Virus record (IMG/VR): IMGVR_UViG_3300029922_000001
Location: 310,001-374,000 of that record
DNA length: 64,000 nucleotides
Strand: one strand, 5' to 3'
Numbering within the stretch: position 1 is the stretch's first letter; the number at the start of each line of letters is the position of its first letter. The position numbers and the translations under genes were made by a program. Positions 9,098-39,580 of the stretch are shown here, piece by piece. The notes under the pieces were generated by a model. It was not told where the DNA came from, searched no databases, and worked only from the letters and a program-made list of their open reading frames with translations.

Positions 9098-9482
9098 TAA
9101 CTTCACCAGAGAAAATAGGTACAGAATCTAAATGAGCCTGAATGCTTGGTGTAAGTGGTCTATTGAATGTACCAATTCCAACATAACTTGGGAACAATCC
9201 TAAATCTGTTGAATCTTGTGCTAATCTTACTTGTTGAGCAAATGTGTTAAATTGTGTTTGTGCGGCAAGTAAAAAGTTCGTATTGAACTTAGCTAATTTA
9301 GTAGAACTATTATCAACGCTAGTGTTGACGTTATAAGATAAATTAACAGTAGAAAAACTATTAGTAAGAGTTTGGGTTAAACTTGTACCAGTATGAGACA
9401 TTGTAAAGTTTACTACAGTTACAACTCCAGTGACGGTTACTGAGTTAATTGTGTAATTAATTGTAATGCTTATATCAGCCAT
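9084..9482 (-). CDS. probable virion protein (Thr/Ser/Val-rich)
   Basis: start MADISIT at 9482 downstream of a class III promoter; beta-rich composition. Confidence 0.6.
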   Translation of the reverse strand: MADISITINYTINSVTVTGVVTVVNFTMSHTGTSLTQTLTNSFSTVNLSYNVNTSVDNSSTKLAKFNTNFLLAAQTQFNTFAQQVRLAQDSTDLGLFPSYVGIGTFNRPLTPSIQAHLDSVPIFSGEVTIGG

Positions 9483-9541
9483 GACTATCATTTCTATATA
9501 ATTGTTTGCATATCCTTTTTCAATGTGGTATACTATCAAAC

Positions 9542-9775
9542 ATGGAACCGACTGAAAGACAAATTAATATACTCAAGCAAGCACCACTTTTTAGAGTGAG
9601 GTATGATGAAAAGGTAGAGCCTTGGGCTGTTACTGTAAAAAATACAATGGTTTGCTGGTGGAAGGAAGTTGAAGAATTGCAGCAACTAGGATTATTGAAT
9701 CCTAGGAATGTTTATGAAGCTGATTTGACGCAAGAGGGGCGAATGTACACATATGATAAAAGTAAAACTAACTGA
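9542..9775 (+). CDS. hypothetical protein
   Basis: leaderless ATG after TGGTATACT; similar to the next ORF (T..Q..IL...P...L...GL). Confidence 0.65.
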   Translation: MEPTERQINILKQAPLFRVRYDEKVEPWAVTVKNTMVCWWKEVEELQQLGLLNPRNVYEADLTQEGRMYTYDKSKTN

Positions 9776-10022
9776 CAAACAAATTGACATTCTAAAAAAT
9801 ACTCCATTAGAGTACTGTGATTCTTCTTGGACAAATTTCGGAATGCATAATAACAAATATGCATTCAATCGTAAAACTGGTCATAGAGTTTACGACTGGC
9901 ACGATGTTGAAGATTTAGAAGAAATGGGATTGTTAAAATTCCATAACCTACTAAGCACTTTAATTGTCGTATTAACTCCTAAAGGAAAAGATGCAATAGC
10001 TGAATCTGTAAGTATAATATAG
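9753..10022 (+). CDS. hypothetical winged-helix-like protein
   Basis: LTDKQIDIL...VEDLEEMGLL...LTPKGK. Confidence 0.6.
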   Translation: MIKVKLTDKQIDILKNTPLEYCDSSWTNFGMHNNKYAFNRKTGHRVYDWHDVEDLEEMGLLKFHNLLSTLIVVLTPKGKDAIAESVSII

Positions 10023-10024
10023 AC

Positions 10025-10345
10025 ATGGTTGGCGGTAAAGTAAAAGAAGTCATTGATTGTGGTAATCTCGTTTGGGTAAACTGCGAAGAGAATTGTTATA
10101 GGATTAGCGGATGTAAAGATCCAACTTGTACTCATGAAGAGTGTGCAGTTTATGTAGAGCGTAATGAAAATTCATTAAAGATTAAAGCAGGGGATAAGTT
10201 ATGGTGGCAAGGTCAAAGCACTTATTGGACACCACAACCTTTCACTAAAAATGAAGAAGATTTAAAATGTGGAATAGATTATGAAATCGACATTCGCAAA
10301 ATGAGTGGTTCAGGAGTTAGTAGACCTGAATTAGTTAGTTGTTAA
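10025..10345 (+). CDS. hypothetical phage protein
   Basis: 106-aa ORF. Confidence 0.65.
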   Translation: MVGGKVKEVIDCGNLVWVNCEENCYRISGCKDPTCTHEECAVYVERNENSLKIKAGDKLWWQGQSTYWTPQPFTKNEEDLKCGIDYEIDIRKMSGSGVSRPELVSC

Positions 10346-10493
10346 GAGTTCCCGATAGTGAGGATCAGCTTAATACGTACCGTTTAAACCGTGGCAAAGT
10401 AAGTGATAGGGAGCAACCTCAATCCTCCGGTATCCCTACCTAGTGGGATGACAACCAGGAAAATAGACTGGTACCGAGGGATATAAGGAGTTT
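10346..10493 (+). ncRNA. GC-rich structured intergenic RNA or leader
   Basis: GTTCCC/GGGAGC, GAGGAT/ATCCTC (crossing), ATCCC/GGGAT, CCAG/CTGG pairings before SD AAGGAG. Confidence 0.4.
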
Positions 10494-10733
10494 ATGGAAT
10501 TAGAATTTAAAGGAACATTTGATGAAGAAAATGATACATTTTTTACAGGTGCAATGAGATACATAGGTTGGGAAGATCCAAATTATCCACTACGTAGTGA
10601 CGGATACATATTAGGTATTCCACTTGAAGAAGTATTTGATTTAAGAAAAGCTGTAATCAATGGTATTACTTTTATTTATCAAGAATCGGAAGAAACGGCT
10701 CAAAAAGCTAGAGAATATTTTGAAGAGGCTTGA
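10494..10733 (+). CDS. hypothetical phage protein
   Basis: SD AAGGAG; 79 aa. Confidence 0.7.
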   Translation: MELEFKGTFDEENDTFFTGAMRYIGWEDPNYPLRSDGYILGIPLEEVFDLRKAVINGITFIYQESEETAQKAREYFEEA

Positions 10734-10760
10734 CAAAATCCAATGAATAAGTGCTATAAT
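10730..10760 (+). promoter_or_regulatory. sigma70-like promoter
   Basis: TTGACA-19-TATAAT (TGC extended -10). Confidence 0.65.
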
Positions 10761-10766
10761 AAATCA

Positions 10767-10983: not shown

Positions 10984-11015
10984 AAAAAAGCCTCATAGAA
11001 ATATGAGGCTTTTTT
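10984..11015. terminator. bidirectional intrinsic terminator
   Basis: AAAAAAGCCTCATA-GAAA-TATGAGGCTTTTTT. Confidence 0.9.
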
Positions 11016-11512: not shown

Positions 11513-12289
11513 TTATAATTTATTTTGCATACGATTACATTCATTAACAATTATATTAACAAATTTTTCATTAGTAAAATAATACATATGAGATGTTGGA
11601 AAATATTTACTGATTAGTCCTCCAACGTTTAATTCTATATCAATAATTCTATCATCCTTAGCATAGGCTTGATTAATTTTTTTTATTGGATACCCAATAA
11701 CATCATAATCACTGTAAATATTTAACCATTTAGAAACATTGATGGGTTCACCGCCACCAGTGTTTGCCAAACTCCAAACCAAGATTGGTGAACCAATGGT
11801 GAATAGTGTTTTTAAGCTCTGTAGTGCCTTCTGTGACTTCAAAGAAGCTGTGTAGTATTTATTGCCATCAGAGTCTTTATTCTGTACATCCCAGATAAAA
11901 TTGTTAGTAATAATAGTTCCTAAACTATGTCCTATCCAAAGTAAAACACCATCATCGCCAAGCCAGTCACTAGCTTCACTTAACACAGAATCAACTCTTT
12001 GATGAATGGCACTATAAACATCATTAGTAGTGTCAGATAATTGATAAGCAACAGCATCGCCAACAAATTCAATCATAAACATACGCAGTGTTTTCCAACC
12101 TAAATTAACAATTTTACTATCTAATTGATCTTCAGTAGTGCGGACTAAATCTTTCCAAGAACAAGGGAAGACTTTAAGTTCTACATTGGTAAGATCCTTA
12201 GTTTGAGATTCTAGCAAGGTTACAAACTCGTTAGCGAAGTCAGGACCGTTATTACCGATACCATGTATAGCAAAAATAGCGATTTTCAT
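11513..12289 (-). CDS. alpha/beta hydrolase (lipase-like), late gene
   Basis: IHGIG, GHSLG nucleophile elbow, TIGSP, D.IGYP, SHMYY; class III promoter. Confidence 0.8.
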   Translation of the reverse strand: MKIAIFAIHGIGNNGPDFANEFVTLLESQTKDLTNVELKVFPCSWKDLVRTTEDQLDSKIVNLGWKTLRMFMIEFVGDAVAYQLSDTTNDVYSAIHQRVDSVLSEASDWLGDDGVLLWIGHSLGTIITNNFIWDVQNKDSDGNKYYTASLKSQKALQSLKTLFTIGSPILVWSLANTGGGEPINVSKWLNIYSDYDVIGYPIKKINQAYAKDDRIIDIELNVGGLISKYFPTSHMYYFTNEKFVNIIVNECNRMQNKL

Positions 12290-12342
12290 AATTTTATGTT
12301 CGATTTAACAGGTTATTTATCCTTAATTTTTAAAAAATAATT

Positions 12343-13026
12343 ATGAAAACTATAATTGCAGAAGTTATGTTATTGGCAAAAGAGTTTGATGAAAATAATA
12401 TGACATATCAAGCTGATGCAGTTGATCAAATTACACACGCAATTCTTGCTCAAATAGATTGGAGTAAACATAGAAAACCTGGACAATTAGAAAAAGAAAA
12501 TAATGCTTTAATAGATAAAAATTTAGATTTAAACGTTCGTCGTAATGAAAATACATTAGCTAATTCAACTGTGTTGAATTATTTTATTAACGGTCACGCA
12601 CCTACTCAAGAACAAATTGAAAAACTAATCAAAGATAGAACTGTTACACAAATGCAGAAAATAAGTGATGTTATTAATTTGTATGGAACACAGGATCAAA
12701 AAACAAGAAGATCACAAACAGTTAAATCTGTTATGTTTGAAGAAGAAGAAAAAAAGAAACTAAAGGGTGTGGACAACAATAAACTAAAATTAAAAATCCA
12801 AAAATTAACCAGTGAAGTAAAGAATATTATCGCAGACATTCGCGCTCTTACTCAGAAAATTAATTTACCAGTTTATAGAGATAAGAAAAATCAACTCCTT
12901 AGCGCCATCGAAGAGAAAAAGTTATTAGTTGAACAGATCAACGATAACATACAGATATTAAAGAATTTATTAATACCTGATACTAATCAAAGTAAATTCT
13001 TTGAGCCTTTAGTTCTAACGGGCTAA
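12343..13026 (+). CDS. probable virion protein with shared N-terminal leader motif
   Basis: LAKEFDENNMTYQADAVD...LAQ leader; coiled coil. Confidence 0.7.
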   Translation: MKTIIAEVMLLAKEFDENNMTYQADAVDQITHAILAQIDWSKHRKPGQLEKENNALIDKNLDLNVRRNENTLANSTVLNYFINGHAPTQEQIEKLIKDRTVTQMQKISDVINLYGTQDQKTRRSQTVKSVMFEEEEKKKLKGVDNNKLKLKIQKLTSEVKNIIADIRALTQKINLPVYRDKKNQLLSAIEEKKLLVEQINDNIQILKNLLIPDTNQSKFFEPLVLTG

Positions 13027-13538: not shown

Positions 13539-15371
13539 TTAGAATGTAAACCCTTCGGTTTTAGCCTTGGCGATTGTTGGATTATCAATTGGGCTAGTTC
13601 CTGTTCCGGTGTTACCGGTGGTTCCATTTGGCTCAATGCTGCCAGTTTGGGCAAGACTTCTAGAAGCTTGATATTTCTTTGTTGCTGCTATTGTTTCTGG
13701 TCCAATAATACCATCAATAGCGACTGGGAAGCCTTTATTAGTTAAGAATGTTTGCCATTGTTGAATGGTTGGTTTTTTAACGAATGGTTGTGCTTGACTT
13801 GTTGATCTATAGCTTTGTATTTGTTGATTGTAGTTCATTGCAAATTGTGCAAATTGAGGATTTCCATCAACGCTACCAACCAACCAAGGATATTTAGTTC
13901 TTAATTGAGGTAATGCATCTCTAAGTTTAATACCTTGTTTACCCATTGCAACCGCTTCTTGAACGGCTTGTGCCACGACTGGTGTCATTGGAGTGTTCAA
14001 AGACATATTGTTAGTATCTCTTATGTCTTTATGTTGTTGACTTTGTGGAACGACTGTTTTACCAAGAATGTCTAAACCACCACCAGTATCACCAGCAAAT
14101 TGTGCTAATTCAGCACCTTGATCTGCTCCAATACCAATAACACCTAAAGCACCAGCAATAGGTTGTAAACCAGGAATAATAGCTGAAATACTACCAAGAA
14201 AGTTTGCAAAAAATCCAATAAATTTAGCTCTTGTATATGCATCATTAGCTAAATCAATTTCTCCACCTTGAATTTTTTGACACCAACTATACGCTTCTGG
14301 AACCTGCATAATTAAACCAATAAAAGGTAAATATTTAGTGAATTTACTTAAAGCATTTAAGGCTGGCATAGATGCGCTAATCTTAGCTAATGCATTTGAA
14401 ATTACACTAGCAACTTCTGAATTTTTAGTTGCCGCCGCAGCAGCTTTATCTAATTCACCAGCAACATTACTAAGATTTTCAGCTTTGGCACTTAAACTAG
14501 CAATTTCTTGTGCGGCTTGAGGGTTATTCATTAATTCTGCATTATTTTTTAAAGCTTGTAGACGTTGAATAGCGGCTTGTTGTGCTTCTGGATTATCAGT
14601 TTTATTTAAGTCTTCTGCGATACTTGTTGCCCAATTTTGCTGTTTTAAATCTCCAGCAGCATTTGTAGTATTTGTGGCATTAGCAGCGGGAGTTGCAGCC
14701 GCATTAGCGGCAGGGGCAAGTTGTGTTAATGCTGCATCTGCTTGAGATGCAGCTTGTGTTGCAAGTTGTGTTTCTTGCGTGATAGCTTGTGCTAATTGTG
14801 GATTAGCTTTATATACTAATAGAAATTCAGGATCTTGAGTGGCTTTGGAAACAATTTGTGCTCCAATTTTACTAGCTAGAGCATTCATAACCAGGCTTTC
14901 ATTGCTTCCCATACCTCCAGCCGCAAAAAAAGCTATAGCTTCTCTAGAAATATTAACGCCCCGTTGTAACCATTTTTCTAAACCTACAGCATTCTTGTTT
15001 TTCATTAAATTGTAAAAAGATGGATATTTTTTTAATAATAAAGCTTCTACGTATTTTAATAATTCTCTAGTTGCCACACTTCTGGCTAGTCCACCTGGAT
15101 TATTCCAATCACCAAAAGCAATTTTAGAACCCAGATCAGTTAGGCTTTCACCTTGTGCTGGTGTACCTTTTGGCATATTTGGATTTAATAAAATATTAGA
15201 ATTCCCACCTGAAGGATCTATATTTTGTGTAGGTGAAATCATTGATGGCGATTGATTGAATGCGTTATTTGGATCAAGGAATCTTTGGGCAGTACGAATC
15301 ATATTGCGATCTATTTCATCAGCAAGGTGGTGAAATCCATTTTTATCTAAACTTCTAGCAATACTATCCAT
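13539..15371 (-). CDS. large probable virion protein with C-terminal peptidoglycan-binding domain
   Basis: leader IARSLDKNGFHHLADEID...TAQ; Ala/Gln-rich body; IQQWQTFL..KGF....DGIIGPETIAATKKYQ...L..TG. Confidence 0.75.
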   Translation of the reverse strand: MDSIARSLDKNGFHHLADEIDRNMIRTAQRFLDPNNAFNQSPSMISPTQNIDPSGGNSNILLNPNMPKGTPAQGESLTDLGSKIAFGDWNNPGGLARSVATRELLKYVEALLLKKYPSFYNLMKNKNAVGLEKWLQRGVNISREAIAFFAAGGMGSNESLVMNALASKIGAQIVSKATQDPEFLLVYKANPQLAQAITQETQLATQAASQADAALTQLAPAANAAATPAANATNTTNAAGDLKQQNWATSIAEDLNKTDNPEAQQAAIQRLQALKNNAELMNNPQAAQEIASLSAKAENLSNVAGELDKAAAAATKNSEVASVISNALAKISASMPALNALSKFTKYLPFIGLIMQVPEAYSWCQKIQGGEIDLANDAYTRAKFIGFFANFLGSISAIIPGLQPIAGALGVIGIGADQGAELAQFAGDTGGGLDILGKTVVPQSQQHKDIRDTNNMSLNTPMTPVVAQAVQEAVAMGKQGIKLRDALPQLRTKYPWLVGSVDGNPQFAQFAMNYNQQIQSYRSTSQAQPFVKKPTIQQWQTFLTNKGFPVAIDGIIGPETIAATKKYQASRSLAQTGSIEPNGTTGNTGTGTSPIDNPTIAKAKTEGFTF

Positions 15372-15512
15372 GTTTAATTAATTATGAATATGTTAAGTGT
15401 ATTCCTTGAAATAGTTCAAAAATGTGGATGTATAGATAGAAAACCGCAAGAAATATTAAGTATATTTCTTGCGGTTTTACTAACGTTAATTATTTCATCC
15501 AAGCCGTTATAT

Positions 15513-17006: not shown

Positions 17007-17573
17007 TTATCCACCACCAATTTGCCCAATTCCATTCATTATTCCCTCTACACTGTTTTGCCAAGCATCTCCAGTGTTTTGCAAGAATCCATCATCTCTT
17101 GCACCTTGACCTTGAGTTTCTGTAATACCCGGTTTTCTTTGTTGTTGATTTGGTTGATTAGGCATAGCATTAGAGAGAGCTTGTATAAATTGTGGAGATT
17201 GCATATTATCTTTAGCATGTTGTAGTGCTTTGGCTTTATCTCCACCAGACCATTTAATATATTGTTGTATTAAATTACCATCTTCTTTTGCTTTTTGTCT
17301 TGATTGCTGATTAAATTGTTGTGTTCCCCATTGTTGATTAGGATATTGTTTATTGTACTGCTGTGTTTGATTAGGTTGTTGTGATGGTGCTGGAGTATTA
17401 GGTTGAACGGTTGATGGTGTAGTTGTGGTGCTTTGTAAACCAGGATTACCGATTGGAGCAGCAGTCATTAAAGCTAATCTTTGAATATGTTTATCAAAAT
17501 TATCCGCAATTTTATACCTGCCTTCTTTATCTGCTTTATTGGCATCTCTAACTAATTGTTCAAGTGTATTCAT
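17007..17573 (-). CDS. probable virion protein with shared leader motif, Gln/Asn-rich
   Basis: DANKADKEGRYKIADNFD; class III promoter. Confidence 0.7.
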   Translation of the reverse strand: MNTLEQLVRDANKADKEGRYKIADNFDKHIQRLALMTAAPIGNPGLQSTTTTPSTVQPNTPAPSQQPNQTQQYNKQYPNQQWGTQQFNQQSRQKAKEDGNLIQQYIKWSGGDKAKALQHAKDNMQSPQFIQALSNAMPNQPNQQQRKPGITETQGQGARDDGFLQNTGDAWQNSVEGIMNGIGQIGGG

Positions 17574-17712
17574 AATGTAACTTATTCTTAATTCAACATT
17601 TTATTTCCTTGTTGGTTTAAAAAGTTTTTAACTTTTTAAACGCATCTATTCTATATGTAATAATTATTTACCATTGAGGTTGTGAAAATTGTGAAGATTG
17701 TCCTTGGCTTTG

Positions 17713-18132
17713 TTATGAACTCATAAATCCGAAATCATCGCCAGTATCTTGTCCCATGCCTTCTTTCTGTGCTAATTCAGCAACTTTGTCGTAAGGCAAC
17801 TGTTTAAGATCCTTCATACTGTAGCCAACACCAATAAGATATTGAACAGGATCTTGATCGTCTTCTTCTTGATTCATTTCGCCCATAACTTGGCTATATG
17901 CTTCAGGATCAAAACTAGGATTACCCTCATGAACTTCGTGGAAGTCTGATTGAGGTTCATCTTCATTGAAGCCACTATTTAGAAAACTATTATCTTGTGC
18001 AAGTTTAATGAAAATATTTGTAACTCTATTAGATTGTCTTTGTAAGACATCTCTTAATTGGTCGTTTTTAGTAGCAAGAGTCTGTTCATCTAGTGCATAA
18101 GCTACGTCTGCTAATTCTTTTAAAATGTTCAT
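17713..18132 (-). CDS. probable virion protein with shared leader motif, acidic
   Basis: LADVAYALDEQ...KLAQ; class III promoter. Confidence 0.7.
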   Translation of the reverse strand: MNILKELADVAYALDEQTLATKNDQLRDVLQRQSNRVTNIFIKLAQDNSFLNSGFNEDEPQSDFHEVHEGNPSFDPEAYSQVMGEMNQEEDDQDPVQYLIGVGYSMKDLKQLPYDKVAELAQKEGMGQDTGDDFGFMSS

Positions 18133-18187
18133 GTGTGTTTAAATACCTCTGTTATTTATATTCTTTAGAGGTATTTAATATCCTTTA

Positions 18188-18763
18188 TCATGAGTAAATA
18201 ACTTCGTTTTTGATAGCTATTATTGATTTTTCTAACTCTTCTATTGTGTCGTTATTGTAGAAAACGCGATCAGCTTTTTCAATTTTTTCTTGTAATGGCA
18301 TTTGCATTGAAATCCATTTTAATGCAGTTTCTTCATCGTATTTATTGCGTTCCATTAGTCGTTTTATCTGTATTTCAGGATCACAAGCAACTAGCCAACT
18401 TTCATAATATCTTAGATATTGACCAGTTTCAAAAAGTAAAGGATTTTCCACAAATAAGGCTGTACTGTTTGAAATACGCAAATTAACTAGAGGATGAACA
18501 TAGTGTTCTATTTCTTTTTTAAATTCTTTGTTGCCTATTAGAGATTTAATTTGATCTTTAGAAAATGGAAAGTCTATATCAGGATTGTATTTTTTCATCA
18601 TCATTACAATTGGATTGGTAATAAATTCGTTTTCATATAACTTAGTAACAATTTCATCTGCGGAAATGACATTTTCCTTTCCAAAATGCTTTGCTAGGAG
18701 GGCTAAGAATGTGGATTTGCCACAGCAAATATTACCAGAAATAGCTATTTTGTGTGAAATCAA
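18188..18763 (-). CDS. coaE: dephospho-CoA kinase
   Basis: IAISGNICCGKST, SADEI, HPLV, ENPLLFE, QIKRLMERN, QMPLQEKIEKAD.VF.N. Confidence 0.9.
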   Translation of the reverse strand: MISHKIAISGNICCGKSTFLALLAKHFGKENVISADEIVTKLYENEFITNPIVMMMKKYNPDIDFPFSKDQIKSLIGNKEFKKEIEHYVHPLVNLRISNSTALFVENPLLFETGQYLRYYESWLVACDPEIQIKRLMERNKYDEETALKWISMQMPLQEKIEKADRVFYNNDTIEELEKSIIAIKNEVIYS

Positions 18764-20713: not shown

Positions 20714-20771
20714 GCTGATATTGTACCACGTTCATAGGATTTAATGTTTTAACTGTAGAATATAAAGCTAT

Positions 20772-23700
20772 ATGTGGTATCGTTTAGCAAATCCAAATTT
20801 CAAAAAAACAGTACAGCAATTCATTAAGCCAAAAGTTAATAACACTTGGATGAATTCTGCTCCTGTTCAACCTGCTCAACCACCAGTACAACCACCAGTA
20901 CAACCACTAGTACAAACACCAGAACAAACACCAGTACAAACACCAGTACCTGTTAATAAAAATTCGCAATTATATGACAGTGTTATGAATCCTCCAGCAG
21001 CTAATTCTGTTGCTACACCAAGTAGAACACCTATCAGTGATAAGCTTCAATTACTTAAAAGTGATGGATATAAATTACAACATGATGATTACAAAGTTAT
21101 TAATGACAGTGATGGCGGTAATAATTACAGTGATGGCGATTCTTATTCTAATGCTGATAGTGATGGACAACCTTCAAAATATTTAACGAATAAGATGTAT
21201 GAGCAAGATCCACTTGACCCAGAATTATTAGAATTATTCAAGGCTTTTGGCGCTTATGATCAAGAGTATGAAGATAAAACGAAGTACGACGTAAATTATT
21301 CAAATTTCTCAAAGAAAATTGAAGACTACAAAACATCTCAAGATCCAAAACTATTAGAATCGCTCATGCAATATGATAAGGACACTACTTTACATAAATT
21401 GACTAACACCGTTGAGTTGTGTTATGAGTTTCCTGACTTAGTAAAACAAAGAATAATAAGTTCTAGTCTTAGTGGTTTAGATACCTTACCTAAAGGTATT
21501 CTTACCCCAGAATTCATGATCAATTTTATTCAAGAAGGTAACCCTATAATAACTAAAGATGGTCTTAGTTTAGTCGGAAAAACCATGTCAATGATTTATC
21601 ATCACAAAGTTGAATCAACTCCAGAGTTGTTAAATACTTGTTTACAGAATGATTTTAATAAAACTTTGGGGTGGATGACTTCGGACCAAAAAGAACAAGT
21701 TAATTTGATGCAATATGTAGATGGTATGGATTTGAGCAGTATGCAATATTTGCAACCTGAACAAATTGATCAGATTTCACCAGACCAATGGGAAAAAATG
21801 ATTAGTAAAAATCCTAGCGATCTTCAATATGTAGGTTCTCAAATTAAAGATAAAATACCTAAAGAAATCATAAATAAATACTTAACTCCAGATATTATTA
21901 GAAATTTATCTTACAATATCTATCCATATTTGAATTTAGAAAGTCTTGATAAATTAAGAGATACTTATCCAAGTTTTTACACTGATCTTATGCGTTATTA
22001 CTATGATTATCTTGATGATTCAATATTGAAGGTTGCCATATCACAATTTAAAAAATGGTTGTATAGCCCAGCGGGATTGAAATATGCACCTATAGATTCA
22101 ATGAATTCATATATGTTTAACAAGCTAAGTAAAAAACAACAAAAAATGATCTTGGAACATGCGCCATACCAAAATATGTCTCATTACATTAAAACACTAT
22201 TAACTCCTGAACAAATTTTTGCAAAAGAAAAAGAATCAGGTTTTAAAGACGTGTTACATGAAGACTTGTACCCTAAGTTTAGTCCAGAACAATTAAAAGA
22301 ACTGATTCTTGCTAGTCCAATATATCTTGCTCAACTACCTTGGGCTCAAGCACAAAGTTTAGGTATGGGATTTTACAAACAGTTATTAGCTAAAGATATT
22401 AAAAATTATTCCAGAATACCACTTTCAATTAAAATTAAAATGGGTAAAAGTGTATTTAAAAATATTAAGGTCGCGCAAATACCTTATATTGCTAGTCAAT
22501 TACCTGCTGAAGTTATTGAAAAATTAAGCGATAAAGAACGTGACTACATTTTAGATAGAGCGGTTAAATATGGCACAGATTTACCAGCCCAACTTTGGGA
22601 ATATGCTAAAACACCTGCTCAAGAAGCAAAACTTTTTGCTTCTGAACCATCCGTTCAAAGTGTCCCACATGACAAACAAGAGAGCTATAGTGAGCATTTA
22701 GAACAAAAATATGGAGCCAACTTACCTGAATTTTTCAAGAAACTTGATATTGAAGCAAATTTCTCTTCGTTCTATCGCGCTAATCCTGAAACTAAATCAA
22801 ATTTTAATGCCGCATTCAGACAAGAATTTGGACATGGACCTTATATTGATATTCATAGTGTGTTAGATTCTTGGGATAGTGGATATAAACGTACTAGTAG
22901 CACAAAACAATTACTATACGCTGCCAATAAAATAGTTGGTAAAACCAGTGCTGTTGATCAAGAAAATTTTGATAATACGGACGGTTATGACGGTTATGAT
23001 GTTGTCAATGATTTAGAAGGCACAGAAACCTTAAAAGAATTAGAGTGGGGATTAAAGAAAGTATATCAAAATACACAAGACATGTTTAGACAAATGGGCA
23101 TCACTCATATTCCTATTGCTAGATTCAAAGGTGTGTCTATTGAAAATTTAGATAAACGTTTTCCACCAGAAATTGCCAATCAGATTCGCGCTAAATTACA
23201 ACTTAAAAAACCTTTTATGTTAACCTTCCAAAACGCCCCAATGAATGAAAGAGTTATGGCAAGTGCTACGTATAATCCTAATGCGATTTGGAGTTCTTTT
23301 GGTGGATCTAAAGGAAGTAAATCATTAAGTGTTAAGGTCTTCGCTAATGTGCCTGTAGAAAACATTATGGCTGCAAAAAATTCTTGTATGTTAGATGATC
23401 ATAGTAGTGAAGATGAAGTTATTATTTTTAACACTTATGATTTACCTTGTACTTTGGTCATTACTTATGGTTATATAGATGTAAATTCTTCTAGCTACAG
23501 CGAAGTACACTCTAATATTTTAAAAAGCATTGGAGATAAAAAATTCTTTAATAAAGCAGAAGTTCCATACACTGAGTTTACTAAGAATAATATCTTCGAT
23601 ACTCAGCCTAAACCAGAACACAAACCAAAACCTACTGAAACACCAAGAGCCAAAGCGGATAATGAATTACCTGATTTAAGTGGTGTAGAAGGTGGAATTG

Positions 23701-23858
23701 AACTACCTGATTTAAGTGGTGTAGAAGGTGGAATTGAACTACCTGATTTAAGCGAATTGTCTAATTTCGATGATGATTCAGAGGACAGTGATTCAGAAAA
23801 TGAATTACCTGATTTAAGTGATGAAGAACTCTTAAAAGAGTTTGGTGGTGATGAATAA
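20772..23858 (+). CDS. large probable virion protein, WY leader, ART-like C-terminal domain and acidic repeat tail
   Basis: MWYRLA; IPIARFKG/ASATY/SEDEV; paralog of the next ORF; class III promoter. Confidence 0.75.
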   Translation: MWYRLANPNFKKTVQQFIKPKVNNTWMNSAPVQPAQPPVQPPVQPLVQTPEQTPVQTPVPVNKNSQLYDSVMNPPAANSVATPSRTPISDKLQLLKSDGYKLQHDDYKVINDSDGGNNYSDGDSYSNADSDGQPSKYLTNKMYEQDPLDPELLELFKAFGAYDQEYEDKTKYDVNYSNFSKKIEDYKTSQDPKLLESLMQYDKDTTLHKLTNTVELCYEFPDLVKQRIISSSLSGLDTLPKGILTPEFMINFIQEGNPIITKDGLSLVGKTMSMIYHHKVESTPELLNTCLQNDFNKTLGWMTSDQKEQVNLMQYVDGMDLSSMQYLQPEQIDQISPDQWEKMISKNPSDLQYVGSQIKDKIPKEIINKYLTPDIIRNLSYNIYPYLNLESLDKLRDTYPSFYTDLMRYYYDYLDDSILKVAISQFKKWLYSPAGLKYAPIDSMNSYMFNKLSKKQQKMILEHAPYQNMSHYIKTLLTPEQIFAKEKESGFKDVLHEDLYPKFSPEQLKELILASPIYLAQLPWAQAQSLGMGFYKQLLAKDIKNYSRIPLSIKIKMGKSVFKNIKVAQIPYIASQLPAEVIEKLSDKERDYILDRAVKYGTDLPAQLWEYAKTPAQEAKLFASEPSVQSVPHDKQESYSEHLEQKYGANLPEFFKKLDIEANFSSFYRANPETKSNFNAAFRQEFGHGPYIDIHSVLDSWDSGYKRTSSTKQLLYAANKIVGKTSAVDQENFDNTDGYDGYDVVNDLEGTETLKELEWGLKKVYQNTQDMFRQMGITHIPIARFKGVSIENLDKRFPPEIANQIRAKLQLKKPFMLTFQNAPMNERVMASATYNPNAIWSSFGGSKGSKSLSVKVFANVPVENIMAAKNSCMLDDHSSEDEVIIFNTYDLPCTLVITYGYIDVNSSSYSEVHSNILKSIGDKKFFNKAEVPYTEFTKNNIFDTQPKPEHKPKPTETPRAKADNELPDLSGVEGGIELPDLSGVEGGIELPDLSELSNFDDDSEDSDSENELPDLSDEELLKEFGGDE
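23664..23820 (+). repeat. 36-bp coding tandem repeat (ELPDLSGVEGGI) with partial copies
   Basis: GAA(T/C)TACCTGATTTAAG at 23664, 23700, 23736 and 23802. Confidence 0.9.
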
Positions 23859-25837
23859 TGATTTGGTATAAACAAGCATCAAATATCGAACCTCAAGAAC
23901 CTGTTGAGGAAATAATAAAACCATTACCTGTTGAGGAAATAATAAAACCATTCGTGCAACCTACACCAATACAACCAATACAAGAAACACCACAGCCACA
24001 AGATGAAATTAGTGCAACTGTGGATACTGTATTAAAAAACCCTTTAGAGTTTGCTTGGTTACCAATTCAGACTAAACAGGCAATAGCAAATCCTTTAGCG
24101 TTAGCTTTAGTTAATAATGGACAGAGCGTATCTTTTGATATTCAGAGACAGTTAACGGATAAAGGTGTTAGTGATATATATAATATTGATCCAATGTTTG
24201 TTTTTATCAATATTCATGTATTTCGATTAACTAAAGAAGAAAAGCGAAAATATATTTTACCTTTATTTCCACAGGTTTATACTGGTAGTAATATAGTAAA
24301 TATGCCATATAACACATGGGGTTTATTAACAACCGAAGAACAAATTGATTACCTTGAAAGCCATATGAATAATTACAAATTCTTCCCTTCATTTTTAAAA
24401 TTAGAAGCTGGACCAACCTTTGCATGGCAACATTTATTACAGACAAACTTTGCAGACAAGGTACCTGGTGAAATAATTGATGAATTTACGCCTGAACAAT
24501 TAAATATTATTGCTGAAAAAGATCCTGGTATGTTGAAATCAATGTCATTAACTGCTCTTAATAAAATAGACGATGCACATATCGAAGCATATTTTGCTAA
24601 TCATTTTTCTAATAAATATCAAGACGCTAGTGGAAATTTAAAAATAAGATATGGTAATAAGATTTTAGATCAAATAATGGACCCTAAATTGTATGGTGTT
24701 TCATATGCGATTGGTGCGATACCTGCTGCGGTTATGGCACAGGCAACCCAAGAACAAAAAGATAGAATGGCTACTCTATTGGAGCAAAAACCAGAATTAT
24801 TAAAAATAAATCATGAACTATGGGGTGTAATCTCAGAAGAGAAATTACCAGAATTTTTCAATAAAGATCCAGATGCTGATTATATGCCCGAAGAAATTCA
24901 AACTAAATTTTTAGCATTTTTTAAGCATAAGTATAACTTAAATTTACCTCAATACTATGATGATGAAAAGCTACAGAGTGCAATAAAAACATACTATGGT
25001 GATCATAGTGATATAGCTTTAGATGATAAATATCCGAATGATCCAACTAGTAGGTATATTAAGAACACCCTTGGACAATGGGATAGTGGCTATAAAAATG
25101 AAAATGTATTATTAATACATATTGCTTCTGCAATATGTAAACCTAATCCATTAGATGATGAATTATCTATGGAATATACCAGTGGCTGGAATGATGATAA
25201 AATAATTAACGGAGAAGCTACTGATAAAGTTAAGGAAAAGGTGTTGTGGGGTATATCACAAGTTCATAAGAATACACAGCAATTTTTTAAAGTTATGAAT
25301 ATGAAAACAATACCACTAGTGCGATATCGCACTGTTAGTGTTCATAACGTTGCCACTAGATTTTCTCCCGAAAATACAAAATTGATTATGGAACACTATC
25401 AAAAAGGTAAGCCTTTTATGCTTACCTTACAGAATCAGCCAATTCAAGCTAGAAGCTTAGCTAGTTTTTCTTATTCACCAATTGCTGTCTGGAATGGTTT
25501 TGGACTCAGTAAGGGCGAATACACAATAAGCATTAAAGAATTTGTTGAAATGCCAGTAGAGAATGTTTTGGCACTACACGGTTCTGTTATGTGTAAAGAT
25601 TTGCCAGAAGAACATGAGGCTGTTGTTATTGATGGTTATGGACTTCCATGTACCATGATAGTCATGTATGGTTATGACCATTCTAAAAATAATCCAGATA
25701 CAGACGATAGTGCAGACCCTAGATACTATCATGACTTAAAAGCATTTATTGAACAAGATTGTCAAGACAAGCGTGATATTGATTTTTATGGAATGAGACA
25801 AAAATTAATAGATGCACCCAATGTTATTGGGTCTTAA
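23858..25837 (+). CDS. probable virion protein, WY leader, ART-like C-terminal domain
   Basis: MIWYKQA; IPLVRYRT/ASFSY/EEHEA; aligns by eye with the 20772 C-terminal domain. Confidence 0.75.
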   Translation: MIWYKQASNIEPQEPVEEIIKPLPVEEIIKPFVQPTPIQPIQETPQPQDEISATVDTVLKNPLEFAWLPIQTKQAIANPLALALVNNGQSVSFDIQRQLTDKGVSDIYNIDPMFVFINIHVFRLTKEEKRKYILPLFPQVYTGSNIVNMPYNTWGLLTTEEQIDYLESHMNNYKFFPSFLKLEAGPTFAWQHLLQTNFADKVPGEIIDEFTPEQLNIIAEKDPGMLKSMSLTALNKIDDAHIEAYFANHFSNKYQDASGNLKIRYGNKILDQIMDPKLYGVSYAIGAIPAAVMAQATQEQKDRMATLLEQKPELLKINHELWGVISEEKLPEFFNKDPDADYMPEEIQTKFLAFFKHKYNLNLPQYYDDEKLQSAIKTYYGDHSDIALDDKYPNDPTSRYIKNTLGQWDSGYKNENVLLIHIASAICKPNPLDDELSMEYTSGWNDDKIINGEATDKVKEKVLWGISQVHKNTQQFFKVMNMKTIPLVRYRTVSVHNVATRFSPENTKLIMEHYQKGKPFMLTLQNQPIQARSLASFSYSPIAVWNGFGLSKGEYTISIKEFVEMPVENVLALHGSVMCKDLPEEHEAVVIDGYGLPCTMIVMYGYDHSKNNPDTDDSADPRYYHDLKAFIEQDCQDKRDIDFYGMRQKLIDAPNVIGS

Positions 25838-26230: not shown

Positions 26231-26290
26231 ATGATGCGAGTATACCCTATTCTAACAGGGATATTTTTCTTGGACTCATAACATATTTAT

Positions 26291-27346
26291 ATGGCATGGT
26301 ATCGCAAAGCAAATACTGGGATTCAACAATTTCAAAATCCGAAGGAATTGTTAATGAACTATAGGCGAAAGGGTTCTGAAATGTTACCCGAATTGATAGA
26401 GTTCGTATCTAAACACTACGGAACTTCACCAGAAGAAGCTAAAAATATAATTTCTGAAAAAACTTTACCTATAGAAGTTATTCAGCAATTTATGAAATAT
26501 ATGCACCATGTTGAACATCCTCTATTGAAGCCTTCATACAATAGTCAACAATATTCAGATATTGCTGGTGCTTATTTAAATACTAGACGTTCCAAAAATG
26601 AAATGCAAGCATATATCTTGTTAGGTTTACCAGGTTCTGGTAAATCTACATATGCTGATGCTGCTGGATTGATTGATCCTAATAAAATTGGAGGATTAGA
26701 AATAGATGTTGATTTATTTAAACCATATAGCCATAAATATTCTCAAGGATATGGATCTTCTTTAGCTCATCCTGATAGTATGGCTTTAGGTGATGTTGCA
26801 CTTACCCAAGCGGCTAATAAAGGTAGTAATTTAGTTTTACCACTAGTTGGAGCTAACGCTAATTATATTGAAGGTGTTATTCATCATTTAAAGAAATTAG
26901 GCTACAACGTTCATATTAAATATTTACATTTAGATCACAATAATGCTGTAAACAGAGCAAAAGAAAGATATGAAACAACAAAGCGTTATGTACCATTAGA
27001 GTATATTAGTGGTATTGCAAATCAGCCTTTTGAAACTTATAATAAGATGAAAAATTTAAACAATGCGGATTCTTTTGAAGATTTGAATGCGCTTGATGTT
27101 GCAAAACAAAGACCACACAGACGACAGAATGAAATATATGAATCAGATACACCATTGTTTGTGACGGCACAAGTGGAAAACAATAGAGATAAAAAAGATA
27201 ACAATGAAGTAATTTTAGAATATCCCTTTAATGAATTTGAGGAATGGGAAGAAACAGTATTAAACTCTTTAAAAAATGCACATCAATTGCTGGAATTTAA
27301 AAAGAGATATCCATACATGCTTCCCTCTAAAGATATGAAGAACTAA
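26291..27346 (+). CDS. zeta-toxin-like P-loop kinase with WY leader
   Basis: MAWYRKA; LLGLPGSGKST, IDVDLFK, LKKLGYNV, RAKERYETTKRYVP. Confidence 0.8.
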   Translation: MAWYRKANTGIQQFQNPKELLMNYRRKGSEMLPELIEFVSKHYGTSPEEAKNIISEKTLPIEVIQQFMKYMHHVEHPLLKPSYNSQQYSDIAGAYLNTRRSKNEMQAYILLGLPGSGKSTYADAAGLIDPNKIGGLEIDVDLFKPYSHKYSQGYGSSLAHPDSMALGDVALTQAANKGSNLVLPLVGANANYIEGVIHHLKKLGYNVHIKYLHLDHNNAVNRAKERYETTKRYVPLEYISGIANQPFETYNKMKNLNNADSFEDLNALDVAKQRPHRRQNEIYESDTPLFVTAQVENNRDKKDNNEVILEYPFNEFEEWEETVLNSLKNAHQLLEFKKRYPYMLPSKDMKN

Positions 27347-27347
27347 A

Positions 27348-27884
27348 ATGAAAAAAATATCAACAAAAACATTCTTAACTAAAAGAAATTTTACCATCAT
27401 TTTGATGGTGCTTTTGTTTGCGTGGTATCAGCCTTATAGAATCTTACAAGTTCAGGGGCACAGCATGGAGCCTACACTATTAAATAATGACTTGGTTGTG
27501 ATTAAGCCATTTAATGGTGTTATTCATAGAGGGGATATTATTGTTACAAAAGATCCTTCCCCGGATTTAGATACAAATGGCAATCTTATTGTGGTCAATA
27601 ATATCATTAAAAGAATAAAATTTCTCCCTGATGATGTCTTCTATATGTCACAAATCAATGGTGTAATGAATACAAGCTACAGTTATGATGAATTAAAACA
27701 AAAATTGTCCAAGAGTGATCTTATATTGATTGATGGTCATTATGTTGGCAAGATTTATAAAACTAGGGTTGACCATAATAAATGTTTTTTACAAGGTGAC
27801 AATACTAATGATTCGATAGATTCAAGAGATTTTGGTCCAATAGATATTAAAAATATATTGTATGTTGTTGCATTGAAGCTATAA
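27348..27884 (+). CDS. lepB: signal peptidase I-like S26 peptidase
   Basis: TM anchor; VQGHSMEPTL (catalytic Ser), IKRI (Lys), GDNTNDSIDSRDFGPI. Confidence 0.9.
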   Translation: MKKISTKTFLTKRNFTIILMVLLFAWYQPYRILQVQGHSMEPTLLNNDLVVIKPFNGVIHRGDIIVTKDPSPDLDTNGNLIVVNNIIKRIKFLPDDVFYMSQINGVMNTSYSYDELKQKLSKSDLILIDGHYVGKIYKTRVDHNKCFLQGDNTNDSIDSRDFGPIDIKNILYVVALKL

Positions 27885-37392: not shown

Positions 37393-37673
37393 AAAAACTA
37401 AAAGTTGATTTTTGTTATATCTATACCTTCTTTCTTGATGATCAGCCATTGACTCAAGAAAGAAGGTTGATTGAAATTGAGTTCCCAGATAAGCACAAAG
37501 AGGTTTGTGCATTATATTGGCAAGATCACTCTACTATAGATAGAGATATGAATGCTACGCATTATGATGTTTCCCATGTTCCTGCTATTAAAACAGACTT
37601 ACATGGTCTTGAAGTTACTCTTAGACTGCAAGATTTGGATTATCAAAATATGTTGTTTGATTTTGTGGAATAA
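37389..37673 (+). CDS. hypothetical protein
   Basis: ATGA overlap. Confidence 0.65.
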   Translation: MKKLKVDFCYIYTFFLDDQPLTQERRLIEIEFPDKHKEVCALYWQDHSTIDRDMNATHYDVSHVPAIKTDLHGLEVTLRLQDLDYQNMLFDFVE

Positions 37674-37688
37674 GCGTATAATATCCAC

Positions 37689-38264
37689 ATGGATGGTTTT
37701 TATGAACATAGATTTCTTAATCTAGTTGTAGGTGACGAAAGAGATTATTCTCTGAAACCCACAACTCAACACATTGAACAATGGTTGGATTATATTTATA
37801 ACGTTTATTCACAACAAAACGAAGAAACTATGTTGATCGAAAAGATTTTTGGTCAGAGAACATTTAGTGAATCTAGTTATTTTTGGGTTAAAACTATTGC
37901 TGATGATTTGAATTATCAAATACCATCATTAGAACAAATAGGTAGAGATATCAATATTGAGCCTAATTGGGATTGTAAAACTGCTAGAGAATGGCAGGAA
38001 GAAAATAATGATATCAAGGTGATTATTCCCTGTGGTTTTCCTAAAAATAGTTGGGATACAGAACGCATTCCTTGGGGTGAATATTGTCATCGAAGGAAAG
38101 AATCAGAGTGTGATAGCACTGGATTTATTAAGCATTTAAAAAACAAAGATAAACTTAGCTATACAATTGCATGTGAAGCAAAATGTGGTCAAAAATTAAG
38201 ATCATGTCTGGTTCTTGTAATGGGAAAACTGCCACTGTACTTGATCTTTGTGCTACTTACTTAA
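37689..38264 (+). CDS. hypothetical protein
   Basis: leaderless after TATAAT; overlaps the next ORF. Confidence 0.6.
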   Translation: MDGFYEHRFLNLVVGDERDYSLKPTTQHIEQWLDYIYNVYSQQNEETMLIEKIFGQRTFSESSYFWVKTIADDLNYQIPSLEQIGRDINIEPNWDCKTAREWQEENNDIKVIIPCGFPKNSWDTERIPWGEYCHRRKESECDSTGFIKHLKNKDKLSYTIACEAKCGQKLRSCLVLVMGKLPLYLIFVLLT

Positions 38265-38503
38265 TGGAAAAATCTAAGAAATACAATAAAGTTCATCAAG
38301 ATGAATCTGATCAGTGTTTTAAAGATGCTGGTGAATATATCAGAATTGCTACTTGGGTTGGTAACATTTTAGATAATGAATGTTTAAGATATAAAGAGGT
38401 AACCAAAGAACATGTATATCAACTATGGGATAGTTTTCATGGTCGCAATATGTTTTCGGAAATTCCACCAGAATATAGAAAAGATTTCTATAATAAGAAG
38501 TAA
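38183..38503 (+). CDS. hypothetical protein
   Basis: 106-aa ORF. Confidence 0.55.
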   Translation: MWSKIKIMSGSCNGKTATVLDLCATYLMEKSKKYNKVHQDESDQCFKDAGEYIRIATWVGNILDNECLRYKEVTKEHVYQLWDSFHGRNMFSEIPPEYRKDFYNKK

Positions 38504-38504
38504 T

Positions 38505-39044
38505 ATGGATAAACAAACATTAATTGATCAATCAAGTGTGTTAGATGCACAGTTGAGAGCCAACAGACAGGCTTTAAAAAAGTTAGAAAAACAAGAAAAG
38601 GGTTGGACTTGGGGTGAACAAATTAGAACTTTGTTATTGGAAGCTGGATATACAGAGACTATCAATTACGAAGGGCATTCAATTTATAAATTTGAAACAT
38701 TAGGTGTTAATATTGAGATTGGTGACAGGTTTACCCTTGGACCTTATATTAACGTTTGTATATGTCCCACTCAAAGACCTTATAGCCCTATTTATCATGT
38801 GAACTTTGATAAATATAAAGATTTCTTACGGTTTTATAATTCAATGAAAATTGAAAAGAAAAGACTCTCTATCACTTTTGAAAGAGATGAATATTTTGTT
38901 ATTTCTGAAGGTACAAAACCTGAATTCAATAACATTAAAAAATGTCTTAAAGAAAGGATTTTATCTGATCTTCAAGAAGATTATGAATATTGGGAGAGAT
39001 TGCCAATCACCGCATATTCCATTACAGAACCGGAAAATATATGA
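38505..39044 (+). CDS. hypothetical protein
   Basis: start MDKQTL. Confidence 0.7.
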   Translation: MDKQTLIDQSSVLDAQLRANRQALKKLEKQEKGWTWGEQIRTLLLEAGYTETINYEGHSIYKFETLGVNIEIGDRFTLGPYINVCICPTQRPYSPIYHVNFDKYKDFLRFYNSMKIEKKRLSITFERDEYFVISEGTKPEFNNIKKCLKERILSDLQEDYEYWERLPITAYSITEPENI

Positions 39045-39274
39045 CACAAGAATTAGTGCAAAAATTAAAAAACGGAGACAAGTTTAGCTGGAATAACACC
39101 AGCATTTCCACAAAAATTTACAATAAAGTGGTTGGACGAATATTCTATGACGAAGTAGATTATGTTATCTACCAAAGCATTCTAGTGAATCATGGCATCA
39201 TTGGTGTTTTTGGTGAAGATATAAATAGCGAAATATGGGATGCGGCAACCGAATATAAGATATCAAATGATTAA
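39041..39274 (+). CDS. hypothetical protein
   Basis: ATGA overlap. Confidence 0.6.
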   Translation: MTQELVQKLKNGDKFSWNNTSISTKIYNKVVGRIFYDEVDYVIYQSILVNHGIIGVFGEDINSEIWDAATEYKISND

Positions 39275-39515
39275 AATTTCCTTTTTAGTAAACGAAAACG
39301 ATTGGCTACCTAATGATGACACTGAACGATGTCAAGCTACTATTGATGATATATTGCATCATGCAATAGGTAATCAACACTCATTGATTGAACAAGCAAT
39401 GGTTGATGGTGCTACAACAGGCAATGATATCTATAAAGATTTAGAAGCGATGTACAGAGTTAAACTTGATATTCTAAAACAAATGCAACGCAATATCAAT
39501 GTTAAAGTGATTTGA
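39267..39515 (+). CDS. hypothetical protein
   Basis: ORF in operon spacing. Confidence 0.6.
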   Translation: MIKISFLVNENDWLPNDDTERCQATIDDILHHAIGNQHSLIEQAMVDGATTGNDIYKDLEAMYRVKLDILKQMQRNINVKVI

Positions 39516-39580
39516 AATTTATTGGGTGGAAATTATGGATTCAGGAAGGAAACTCAATAGCTATGCTTTAAAATAAAAGT

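What the first reader, a model, noticed from the sequence alone, without database searches (positions are those of the whole stretch)
9482..39580. Third promoter class: sigmaH-like AGGA-N17/18-GAAH in front of probable virion genes
Seen: AGGA-18-GAAT (20736/20758), the same on the minus strand upstream of 17573, AGGA-17-GAAT upstream of 18132, AGGA-18-GAAC upstream of 12289 and AGGA-18-GAAA upstream of 9482. Looser variants lie before 15371, 39581, 26291 and 12343, with AGGA about 30-32 nt from ATG in most. None has the TATACT box. Known: this resembles the Bacillus sigmaH consensus. Inference: late promoters read by a phage-encoded or stress sigma factor. The motif flags structural genes that lack homology.
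Basis: partly seen in the sequence, partly recalled or inferred. Interest (0 to 1): 0.6.

Follow-up and report, generated by a model that had tools for sequence, protein, structure and literature searches.

The report
SigmaH-type leaderless promoters in huge phage
A 441-kb phage from peat has about 35-45 promoters that look like bacterial sigma-H promoters and sit so close to the start codon that the mRNAs should have no leader. The phage also encodes its own sigma-H-like factor, so this looks like a real gene-expression class, but there is no evidence that it marks virion genes.

Summary
The motif is real, but only when its position relative to start codons is counted. The bare pattern AGGA-N17/18-GAAH is not enriched: 9 in the window against 15 expected.

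- **Position.** Genome-wide, 11 of 68 exact matches end 8-10 nt before a gene start, against about 0.4 expected. An iterated matrix finds 35 gene starts against about 1.6 expected. AGGA at exactly -34 also emerges from an unseeded scan.
- **Match to sigma-H.** The geometry equals mapped Clostridioides difficile SigH promoters: AGGA, 17-18 nt, GAAT, then 7-10 nt to the transcript start.
- **No leader.** In the phage that start falls on the A of ATG. Members lack a Shine-Dalgarno sequence in 34 of 35 cases. Copies placed further upstream carry one.
- **Candidate factor.** The phage encodes a sigma whose best family matches are all SigH models, though below their cut-offs. Five of five related huge phages keep it.
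- **Relatives.** They show the same core motif before orthologous genes.
- **Not supported.** Members with a recognisable function are a subtilisin-type protease, a Zeta-toxin-type kinase, a lysin-like protein, homing endonucleases and transposases. The rest have no recognisable relatives. Expression timing could not be tested because no RNA data exist.

The parts
20730..20774 (+). Class-3 promoter. The -35 box AGGA is at 20736-20739, the spacer is 18 nt, and the -10 box GAAT is at 20758-20761. The ATG at 20772 follows after 10 nt. No Shine-Dalgarno sequence is present.
   Evidence: matrix score 15.2
20772..25837 (+). Two-gene unit behind that promoter: 1028 aa (20772-23858) and 659 aa (23858-25837). 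Neither has recognisable relatives.
   Evidence: Blank
17571..17615 (-). Class-3 promoter. AGGA is at 17609-17606, the spacer is 18 nt, and GAAT is at 17587-17584. The ATG at 17573 follows after 10 nt. It heads gene 17007-17573 (188 aa).
   Evidence: score 17.8
18130..18190 (-). Leadered class-3 promoter. AGGA is at 18184-18181, the spacer is 17 nt, and GAAT is at 18163-18160. The ATG at 18132 follows after 27 nt, and the leader holds AGAGGT. It fills the 55-nt gap before gene 17713-18132 (139 aa).
   Evidence: score 18.6
12287..12329 (-). Class-3 promoter. AGGA is at 12323-12320, the spacer is 18 nt, and GAAC is at 12301-12298. The ATG at 12289 follows after 8 nt. It heads gene 11513-12289 (258 aa).
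   Evidence: score 12.6
12304..12345 (+). Divergent, overlapping class-3 promoter in the same 53-nt spacer. AGGT is at 12310-12313, the spacer is 17 nt, and TAAA is at 12331-12334. The ATG at 12343 follows after 8 nt. It heads gene 12343-13026 (227 aa).
   Evidence: (score 16.6)
9480..9522 (-). Class-3 promoter. AGGA is at 9516-9513, the spacer is 18 nt, and GAAA is at 9494-9491. The ATG at 9482 follows after 8 nt. It heads gene 9084-9482 (132 aa). On the other strand a TATACT box sits 7 nt before the ATG at 9534.
   Evidence: score 17.4
26251..27884 (+). Class-3 variant. AGGG is at 26257-26260, the spacer is 18 nt, and TAAC is at 26279-26282. The ATG at 26291 follows after 8 nt. The genes behind it are 26291-27346 (Zeta_toxin-type P-loop kinase) and 27348-27884 (S26 peptidase).
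   Evidence: (score 13.6)
15369..15412 (-). Sub-threshold look-alike: AGGA-N18-TAAT-N9-ATG before 15371. The gene is 610 aa with a peptidoglycan-binding domain.
   Evidence: score 7.3, threshold 10.3
39541..39583 (+). Sub-threshold look-alike: AGGA-N18-TAAA-N8-ATG before 39581.
   Evidence: score 5.1
55078..55120 (+). Weak outlier outside the finding: ATGA-N17-GAAA-N9-ATG before 55118. It may be a false positive.
   Evidence: score 13.5

Best explanation
These sites are a genuine third promoter class of a 441-kb phage. The -35 element is a/g-n-AGGA-w-w, centred with its first A at -34. A 17-18 nt spacer follows, then a -10 element t-a-[G/T]AA[T/A/C]-w-w. This is the sigma-H promoter architecture of Bacillota.

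The most likely reader is host core RNA polymerase carrying the phage's own sigma-H-like factor. That gene lies at genome 56284-56937, outside the window, inside a run of TATAAT-type units that the host's primary sigma would probably transcribe first. Class 3 would therefore be a later step in a sigma cascade.

In about 30 members the -10 box ends 8-10 nt before the ATG. Transcription should then start on or within 2 nt of the A of AUG, giving leaderless mRNAs translated without a Shine-Dalgarno sequence. About 10 further copies sit 12-40 nt upstream and rely on a Shine-Dalgarno sequence in the short leader.

Shown here: the motif, its locking to start codons, its specificity, its conservation, and the presence of the sigma gene. 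Inferred: which sigma reads it, the exact transcript start, and the timing.
For: **Position locking.**
- 11 of 68 exact matches end 8-10 nt before a start.
- The matrix finds 35 gene starts against about 1.6 expected.
- AGGA at -34 appears in an unseeded scan with z = 11.5.
- Unrelated phage loci used as a negative control give 3 against 1.8 expected.

**Specificity.**
- Only 2 of 104 TATAAT-class promoters have AGGA at the equivalent place.
- Canonical sigma-70 pairs are not enriched in 9-28 kb.

**Sigma-H geometry.**
- 41 C. difficile SigH promoters listed up to their mapped starts show AAGGA, 17-18 nt, GAAT, then mostly 8-9 nt to the start (PMC7438776, Table 3).
- In the phage, 20 of 35 members have 8 nt between the -10 box and the A of ATG.

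**Leaderless signature.**
- A Shine-Dalgarno-like 4-mer occurs in 1 of 35 members. The rate is 12% in random windows and 45% in unclassified genes.
- The start codon is ATG in 32 of 35, and it is the first start of the ORF in 28 of 35.
- Copies 12-40 nt upstream carry GGAG-type Shine-Dalgarno sequences.
- Divergent spacers that contain a class-3 promoter are 52-68 nt. Same-strand gaps before class-3 genes cluster at 36-40 nt.

**Sigma gene.**
- The best NCBIfam hits are five SigH-family models (E = 4e-32). The next family scores only 38 bits.
- Orthologues occur in 5 of 5 relatives.
- The gene lies among class-2 units.

**Conservation.**
- AGG[AGT]-N18/19-GAA[TC] stands before the S8 protease orthologues of several lineages.
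- The same core stands before 6 of 15 other orthologues in two relatives.
- The matrix is enriched at gene starts in relatives: 10 against 0.6, and 5 against 1.2.
Against: - No transcript data exist, so transcript starts and timing are inferred.
- The sigma scores below every SigH equivalog cut-off (111 bits against 208; 105 against 295).
- That sigma is only about 28% identical to the nearest matches among deposited phage records.
- The genome has three other sigma-like genes. One of them, at 59271-59876, is equally conserved in the clade.
- 13 of 35 matrix members have T instead of G in the -10 box. A few of those read TATAAT and could be used by the host's primary sigma.
- In relatives most copies are leadered, so the leaderless layout is lineage-specific.
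- My gene calls come from a home-made caller.
Confidence: 0.6

Rival explanations
1. The host's own sigma-H reads these promoters, alone or together with the phage copy. That would tie this gene class to the host's transition or stationary state.
For: The motif is indistinguishable from bacterial SigH promoters. Shine-Dalgarno use and the SigH-like gene both suggest a Bacillota host.
Against: The phage keeps its own SigH-like gene, and so do 5 of 5 relatives. The motif recurs in relatives with 33-46% GC, which probably have different hosts. Heading long operons from a stress sigma would be risky for a lytic programme.
Confidence: 0.15
2. Another phage sigma reads class 3, and the sigma-H resemblance is coincidental. 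The candidates are the ECF-like factor at genome 59271-59876 and the factors at 229402-229983 and 397154-398047.
For: The ECF-like factor is also conserved in 5 of 5 relatives. The second-best class-3 site lies just downstream of it at 60729.
Against: Its family hits are generic ECF and FliA models, not SigH. The promoter matches SigH sites box by box and in spacing. The other two sigma-like genes occur in only 2 of 5 relatives.
Confidence: 0.12
3. The host's primary sigma uses the TAGAAT/TATAAT-like -10 box, and AGGA is the site of a phage activator that replaces -35 recognition, as in T4 MotA/AsiA.
For: The -10 box differs from TATAAT by one base, and 13 of 35 members have T there. Class-2 promoters work without any -35 box.
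Against: The -10 box sits 2 nt further from the ATG than in class 2. The AGGA-to-GAAT spacing equals that of sigma-H promoters. No MotA-like gene was sought or seen.
Confidence: 0.08
4. It is a compositional artefact of an AT-rich genome.
For: The bare pattern is at or below chance.
Against: Positional enrichment is about 20-fold or more. The reversed-sequence control and the unrelated-phage control are flat.
Confidence: 0.02

Closest known systems
Sigma-H (SigH/Spo0H) promoters of Bacillota, for example the mapped C. difficile SigH regulon (PMC7438776)
   Same: - An A-rich stretch followed by AGGA.
- A 17-18 nt spacer.
- A -10 box of the form (t)aGAAT-w-w.
- AGGT and AGGG variants are tolerated.
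- The transcript start lies 7-10 nt after GAAT.
   Different: - Here the element is on a phage and is probably read by a divergent phage-encoded factor.
- It is placed so that the transcript starts on the start codon. The C. difficile study found only 15 leaderless candidates genome-wide.
- T replaces G in the -10 box in about a third of members.
Bacillus phage SPO1 gp28 (middle) and gp33/34 (late) sigma cascade. The promoter consensus is from my own knowledge. The clustering of gp28 in a group that also holds sigD, sigH and sigI is from bioRxiv 10.1101/2021.11.12.468384.
   Same: - Phage-encoded sigma factors redirect host core polymerase to phage-specific promoter classes.
- The gp28 -35 box also begins with AGGA.
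   Different: - The -10 box differs.
- No sequence similarity to SPO1 was detected by tblastn at E <= 1e-3.
- This phage has four sigma-like genes.
- SPO1 transcripts are not known to be start-codon-locked.
Phage-encoded sporulation-like sigma factors (SigF/G-like) of Bacillus phages (bioRxiv 10.1101/2021.11.12.468384)
   Same: A phage copy of a host alternative sigma family.
   Different: - Those act on host sporulation genes and appear dispensable for lysis.
- Here about 40 phage promoters match the factor's expected specificity.
Leaderless genes with a -10 box at fixed distance from the start codon (Actinobacteria, Deinococcus-Thermus; PMC3160421), and lambda cI from PRM (own knowledge)
   Same: - The -10 element lies 6-8 nt before AUG.
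- There is no Shine-Dalgarno sequence.
- AUG is strongly preferred as the start codon.
   Different: - The scale and setting differ. About 240 of 566 called genes of a phage carry such boxes, under three different promoter types.
- The jumbo phages mapped so far (AR9, phiKZ) showed no leaderless transcripts.

Membership tests
Sigma-H-dependent promoter | -35 box r-n-AGGA-w-w | tested here: met
   Matrix from 35 sites: A/G at -2, AGGA (A in 25, G or T in the rest), then T/A T/A. It matches the C. difficile table.
Sigma-H-dependent promoter | -10 box GAAT-w-w, 17-18 nt after AGGA | tested here: met
   Nearly all spacers are 17 or 18 nt. The box is GAA[T/A/C] in 22 sites and TAA[T/A/C] in 13.
Sigma-H-dependent promoter | Transcript start 7-10 nt after GAAT | not testable with these tools
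   No RNA run holds the phage. The ATG lies 8-10 nt after the box in 30 of 35 sites.
Sigma-H-dependent promoter | Transcription depends on a SigH protein | not testable with these tools
   This needs in-vitro or genetic work.
SigH protein family (NCBIfam equivalogs NF006148, TIGR02859) | Score above the curated cut-off | tested here: not met
   111.2 bits against 208, and 104.9 bits against 294.8. The protein is SigH-like, not an equivalog.
SigH protein family (NCBIfam equivalogs NF006148, TIGR02859) | SigH models are the best hits, over the full length | tested here: met
   The top five hits are SigH-family models covering positions 4-192 of 198. The next family scores 38 bits.
Leaderless mRNA genes | Promoter -10 box at a fixed short distance, no Shine-Dalgarno sequence, AUG start | tested here: met
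Leaderless mRNA genes | Mapped 5' end on the start codon | not testable with these tools
Late / virion gene class | Downstream genes encode virion proteins | tested here: inconclusive
   Recognisable members are enzymes and mobile-element genes. The large members gave blanks in PHROGs, Pfam, PDB, Atlas and tblastn.
Late / virion gene class | Expression late in infection | not testable with these tools
   No host and no RNA data.

The most novel reading that the evidence does not exclude
The phage runs roughly 40% of its genes (about 240 of 566) as leaderless mRNAs from three different promoter types, each locked to the start codon. It also carries four sigma-like genes and its own IF3 homologue. 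Together these could form a combined transcription-translation takeover, in which phage messages are initiated by a route that Shine-Dalgarno-dependent host messages cannot use.
Probability: 0.25. Interest if true: 0.8.

Novelty: new variant of a known kind. Interest (0 to 1): 0.6.

Why it matters
Phage-encoded sigma factors with their own promoter classes are textbook biology. This case adds three things.

- **A readable factor-promoter pair.** A sigma-H-family factor on a phage, paired with about 40 matching promoters, gives a directly testable link in uncultivated huge phages.
- **An unusual layout.** Start-codon locking predicts mass production of leaderless mRNAs in a phage whose genes otherwise use Shine-Dalgarno sequences. 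That was not seen in the jumbo phages mapped so far.
- **A practical annotation aid.** The three boxes fix true start codons and operon heads in a genome where most proteins have no relatives.

Tried and rejected
**Searches that gave nothing.**
- Bare-pattern enrichment: none.
- Megablast of 13 kb against deposited phages: no match.
- Pattern search for relatives of the 1028-aa protein: none.
- Pfam terminase_6C, HK97 capsid and sheath models on the genome: no hit. Hallmark virion genes therefore could not be located.
- PDB sequence searches of six large class-3 proteins: none.
- ESM Atlas: only sub-threshold leads.
- tblastn of the 1028-aa protein: none.
- PHROGs on the seven giant proteins of the 118-150 kb block: blank.
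- Ribosomal protein S21: absent.

**RNA evidence.** 17 peat metagenome DNA runs hold the phage and none is RNA. I therefore did not use read laying, because contigs cannot show transcript starts.

**Alternative genetic code.** A tRNA with anticodon CUA prompted one TAG=Q ORF listing of the ORF-free stretch 44990-46510. It opened no gene. Removing any one stop codon gave no special gain. I therefore used the standard code throughout.

**Readings rejected.**
- AGGA as a ribosome-binding or standby site: it lies 34 nt upstream, and members lack any Shine-Dalgarno sequence.
- An RNA hairpin at 18132: only one arm of the inverted repeat would be transcribed.

**Not attempted.** Structure prediction and complex prediction. 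Single-sequence folds of proteins without relatives would not have settled the virion question.
Full report
**Context.**
- The window is bases 310001-374000 of a single 441,498-bp virus record with 34% GC.
- DNA of this phage occurs in 17 peat metagenome studies, none of them RNA.
- I called 566 genes with a simple codon-usage caller. All gene-level statistics rest on that call.

**The observation.**
- The five strict sites exist as written.
- As a bare pattern the motif is not enriched: the window holds 9 matches against 15.3 expected.
- The picture changes once position is considered.
  - Genome-wide there are 68 exact matches, and 11 of them end 8-10 nt before a called start on the same strand. 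All other distances hold 0-2.
  - With 1566 candidate starts on 883 kb of strand, my estimate of the expectation is about 0.4.
- I seeded a two-block matrix from those 11 sites and iterated it. It selects 35 gene starts at a threshold passed by 0.1% of non-start ATGs, so about 1.6 are expected.
- An unseeded scan of the 358 genes that lack the other two boxes gives AGGA at exactly -34 (13 against 1.1) as the strongest signal after the Shine-Dalgarno sequence.
- The controls are flat.
  - The reversed sequence gives 34 hits against 87.
  - 23 unrelated phage loci give 3 against 1.8.

**Anatomy.**
- The consensus is a-a-(g/a)-(a/c)-AGGA-(t/a)(t/a), then 17-18 nt, then t-t-(t/a)-[G/T]AA[T/A/C]-a-(t/a)-a.
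- The ATG follows the -10 box after 8 nt in 20 sites, 9 nt in 7 sites and 10 nt in 3 sites.

**Why these are promoters for leaderless mRNAs.**
1. All three promoter types in this genome are locked to start codons.
   - Class 1 is AATCCCCAAT ... aGGTATACT-N6-ATG. It has 102 genes, nearly all on the + strand at 340-441 kb, with a median length of 105 aa.
   - Class 2 is gTATAAT-N5/6-ATG, with 104-106 genes.
   - Six nucleotides after a -10 hexamer is the canonical start position.
2. Class-3 genes almost never have a Shine-Dalgarno-like 4-mer at -17 to -5: 1 of 35. The rate is 12% in random windows and 45% in unclassified, mostly operon-internal genes.
3. 32 of 35 start with ATG, and 28 of 35 use the first possible start of their ORF.
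4. High-scoring copies 12-40 nt from a start do carry GGAG-type Shine-Dalgarno sequences in the intervening stretch. The window site at 18184 is one of them. A transcript start just after the -10 box predicts exactly this.
5. Intergenic spacers are cut to size.
   - Divergent pairs with a class-3 member are 52-68 nt apart. Examples are 53 nt between 12289 and 12343, and 58 nt between 20713 and 20772.
   - Class-2/class-2 pairs are only 26-38 nt apart.
   - Same-strand gaps before class-3 genes cluster at 36-40 nt.

**Comparison with sigma-H.**
- Table 3 of PMC7438776 lists 41 C. difficile SigH promoters up to their mapped starts.
- They read A-rich, then AGGA (with AGGT and AGGG variants), then 17-18 nt, then (g/a)TAGAAT.
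- By my count on 30 of them, 7-10 nt (mostly 8-9) lie between GAAT and the start.
- The phage sites share the boxes, the spacer and the variants.
- The 8-nt distance puts the predicted start on the A of ATG.
- Class-2 promoters have no -35 box and carry AGGA at the equivalent place in only 2 of 104. AGGA is therefore specific to class 3.

**The factor.**
- Pfam-based searches found three sigma-like genes, at genome 229402-229983, 59271-59876 and 397154-398047.
- A search with the SigH model found a fourth at 56284-56937.
  - Its five best NCBIfam hits are all SigH-family models (E = 4e-32 to 2e-28, covering nearly the whole model).
  - The next family scores 38 bits.
  - It stays below the equivalog cut-offs, so I call it SigH-like.
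- It has orthologues (34-38% identity) in all five related huge phages tested. In each, the orthologue lies about 3 kb from the orthologue of the ECF-like factor.
- Both genes lie within TATAAT-type units. This fits an order in which the host's primary sigma acts first, then the phage sigma, then class 3. That order is inference.
- Among 50,697 deposited phage records, only 8 show any match to this protein, at 28% identity or less.

**Conservation.**
- The class-3 gene at genome 159994 is an S8 subtilisin. Its orthologues sit in the same gene order in other huge phages.
- Their upstream regions vary by lineage.
  - One lineage at 46% GC has AGGG-N18-GAAC-N8-ATG.
  - A second lineage has AGGT-N18-GAAT followed by an 18-nt leader with GAGG.
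  - A third group has AGGA-N19-GAAT followed by a leader of about 20 nt with GAGGTG.
  - Overall, 12 of 69 distinct upstream regions hold the exact pattern against 1.1 expected. Several of those belong to one lineage.
- I fetched two relatives whole.
  - My matrix is enriched at their gene starts, 5 against 1.2 and 10 against 0.6.
  - 6 of 15 orthologues of class-3 genes keep the core motif within 75 nt, mostly with a leader.
- The closest relative also has start-codon-locked class-1-like boxes, while the other uses ordinary leaders.
- The promoter type is therefore clade-wide, and the leaderless layout is lineage-specific.

**What the genes are.**
- Recognisable class-3 products:
  - the S8 protease;
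  - a Zeta_toxin-type P-loop kinase with an S26 peptidase behind it (window 26291-27884);
  - a lysin-like protein;
  - three homing endonucleases and two TnpB-type transposases.
- The best-scoring site heads a 17-kb operon of 708-1478-aa proteins (genome 118433-135840).
- Leadered copies head genes of 1732 and 1869 aa.
- All of these large proteins were blank in every search.
- 16 of 35 class-3 genes head divergent units, so the class is enriched at operon heads.
- The reading 'virion genes' is possible for the large proteins but is not shown, and it is wrong for the annotated members.

**Limits.**
- There are no transcript data.
- The gene calls are my own.
- The matrix was trained and counted on the same genome, although the unseeded scan and the relatives are independent of it.
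- A third of members have T for G in the -10 box and might also be read by the primary sigma.

Noticed in passing
whole genome; in the window for example 47429, 49644, 54106, 56285, 58125, 60381, 63525: The main promoter class is AATCCCCAAT at about -36 plus aGGTATACT, followed by exactly 6 nt and then ATG. It stands before 102 mostly small genes, nearly all on the + strand at genome 340-441 kb. The -35-like CCCCA box matches no sigma consensus that I know. The AGGT inside it could double as a Shine-Dalgarno sequence on read-through transcripts.
   Followed up: partly
window 7496-8498 (33-nt divergent spacer) and genome-wide: TATAAT-class promoters have no -35 box. Divergent gene pairs of this class sit only 26-38 nt apart, so the two -10 boxes nearly touch.
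   Followed up: partly
window 43602-43673: A tRNA with anticodon CUA, which would read amber codons (ARAGORN labels it tRNA-Pyl). I found no sign of TAG recoding in ORF statistics.
   Followed up: partly
window 44990-46510: A 1.5-kb stretch without ORFs and without Rfam hits. At 45090-45400 it holds 4-5 repeats with a 55-65 nt period. Each is a hairpin with the conserved loop GGTTCTCGAAAA followed by AACCGAGAG. Unexplained.
   Followed up: partly
genome 254486-255016 (-), outside the window: A phage-encoded IF3 homologue (IF3_C domain, 70 bits, above the cut-off). This is notable in a genome that seems to rely on leaderless mRNAs, which IF3 normally disfavours.
   Followed up: no
window 18140-18175: The inverted repeat ATACCTCT / AGAGGTAT brackets the -10 box of the 18132 promoter. 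It could be an operator.
   Followed up: no
genome 137246-159954, outside the window: Three consecutive giant genes (2843, 1525 and 3178 aa) lie just upstream of the S8 protease. Relatives keep a 2700-aa gene and a PA14-domain protein there, followed by S26 and trypsin-like proteases, DnaJ, a UvsW-like helicase, HSP70 and RNase HII.
   Followed up: partly
window 18760-20058 (-): A fusion of a phosphohydrolase-like part with a cytidylyltransferase-like domain, probably for nucleotide or NAD metabolism. It stands behind a TATACT box, next to a DUF3841 gene.
   Followed up: no
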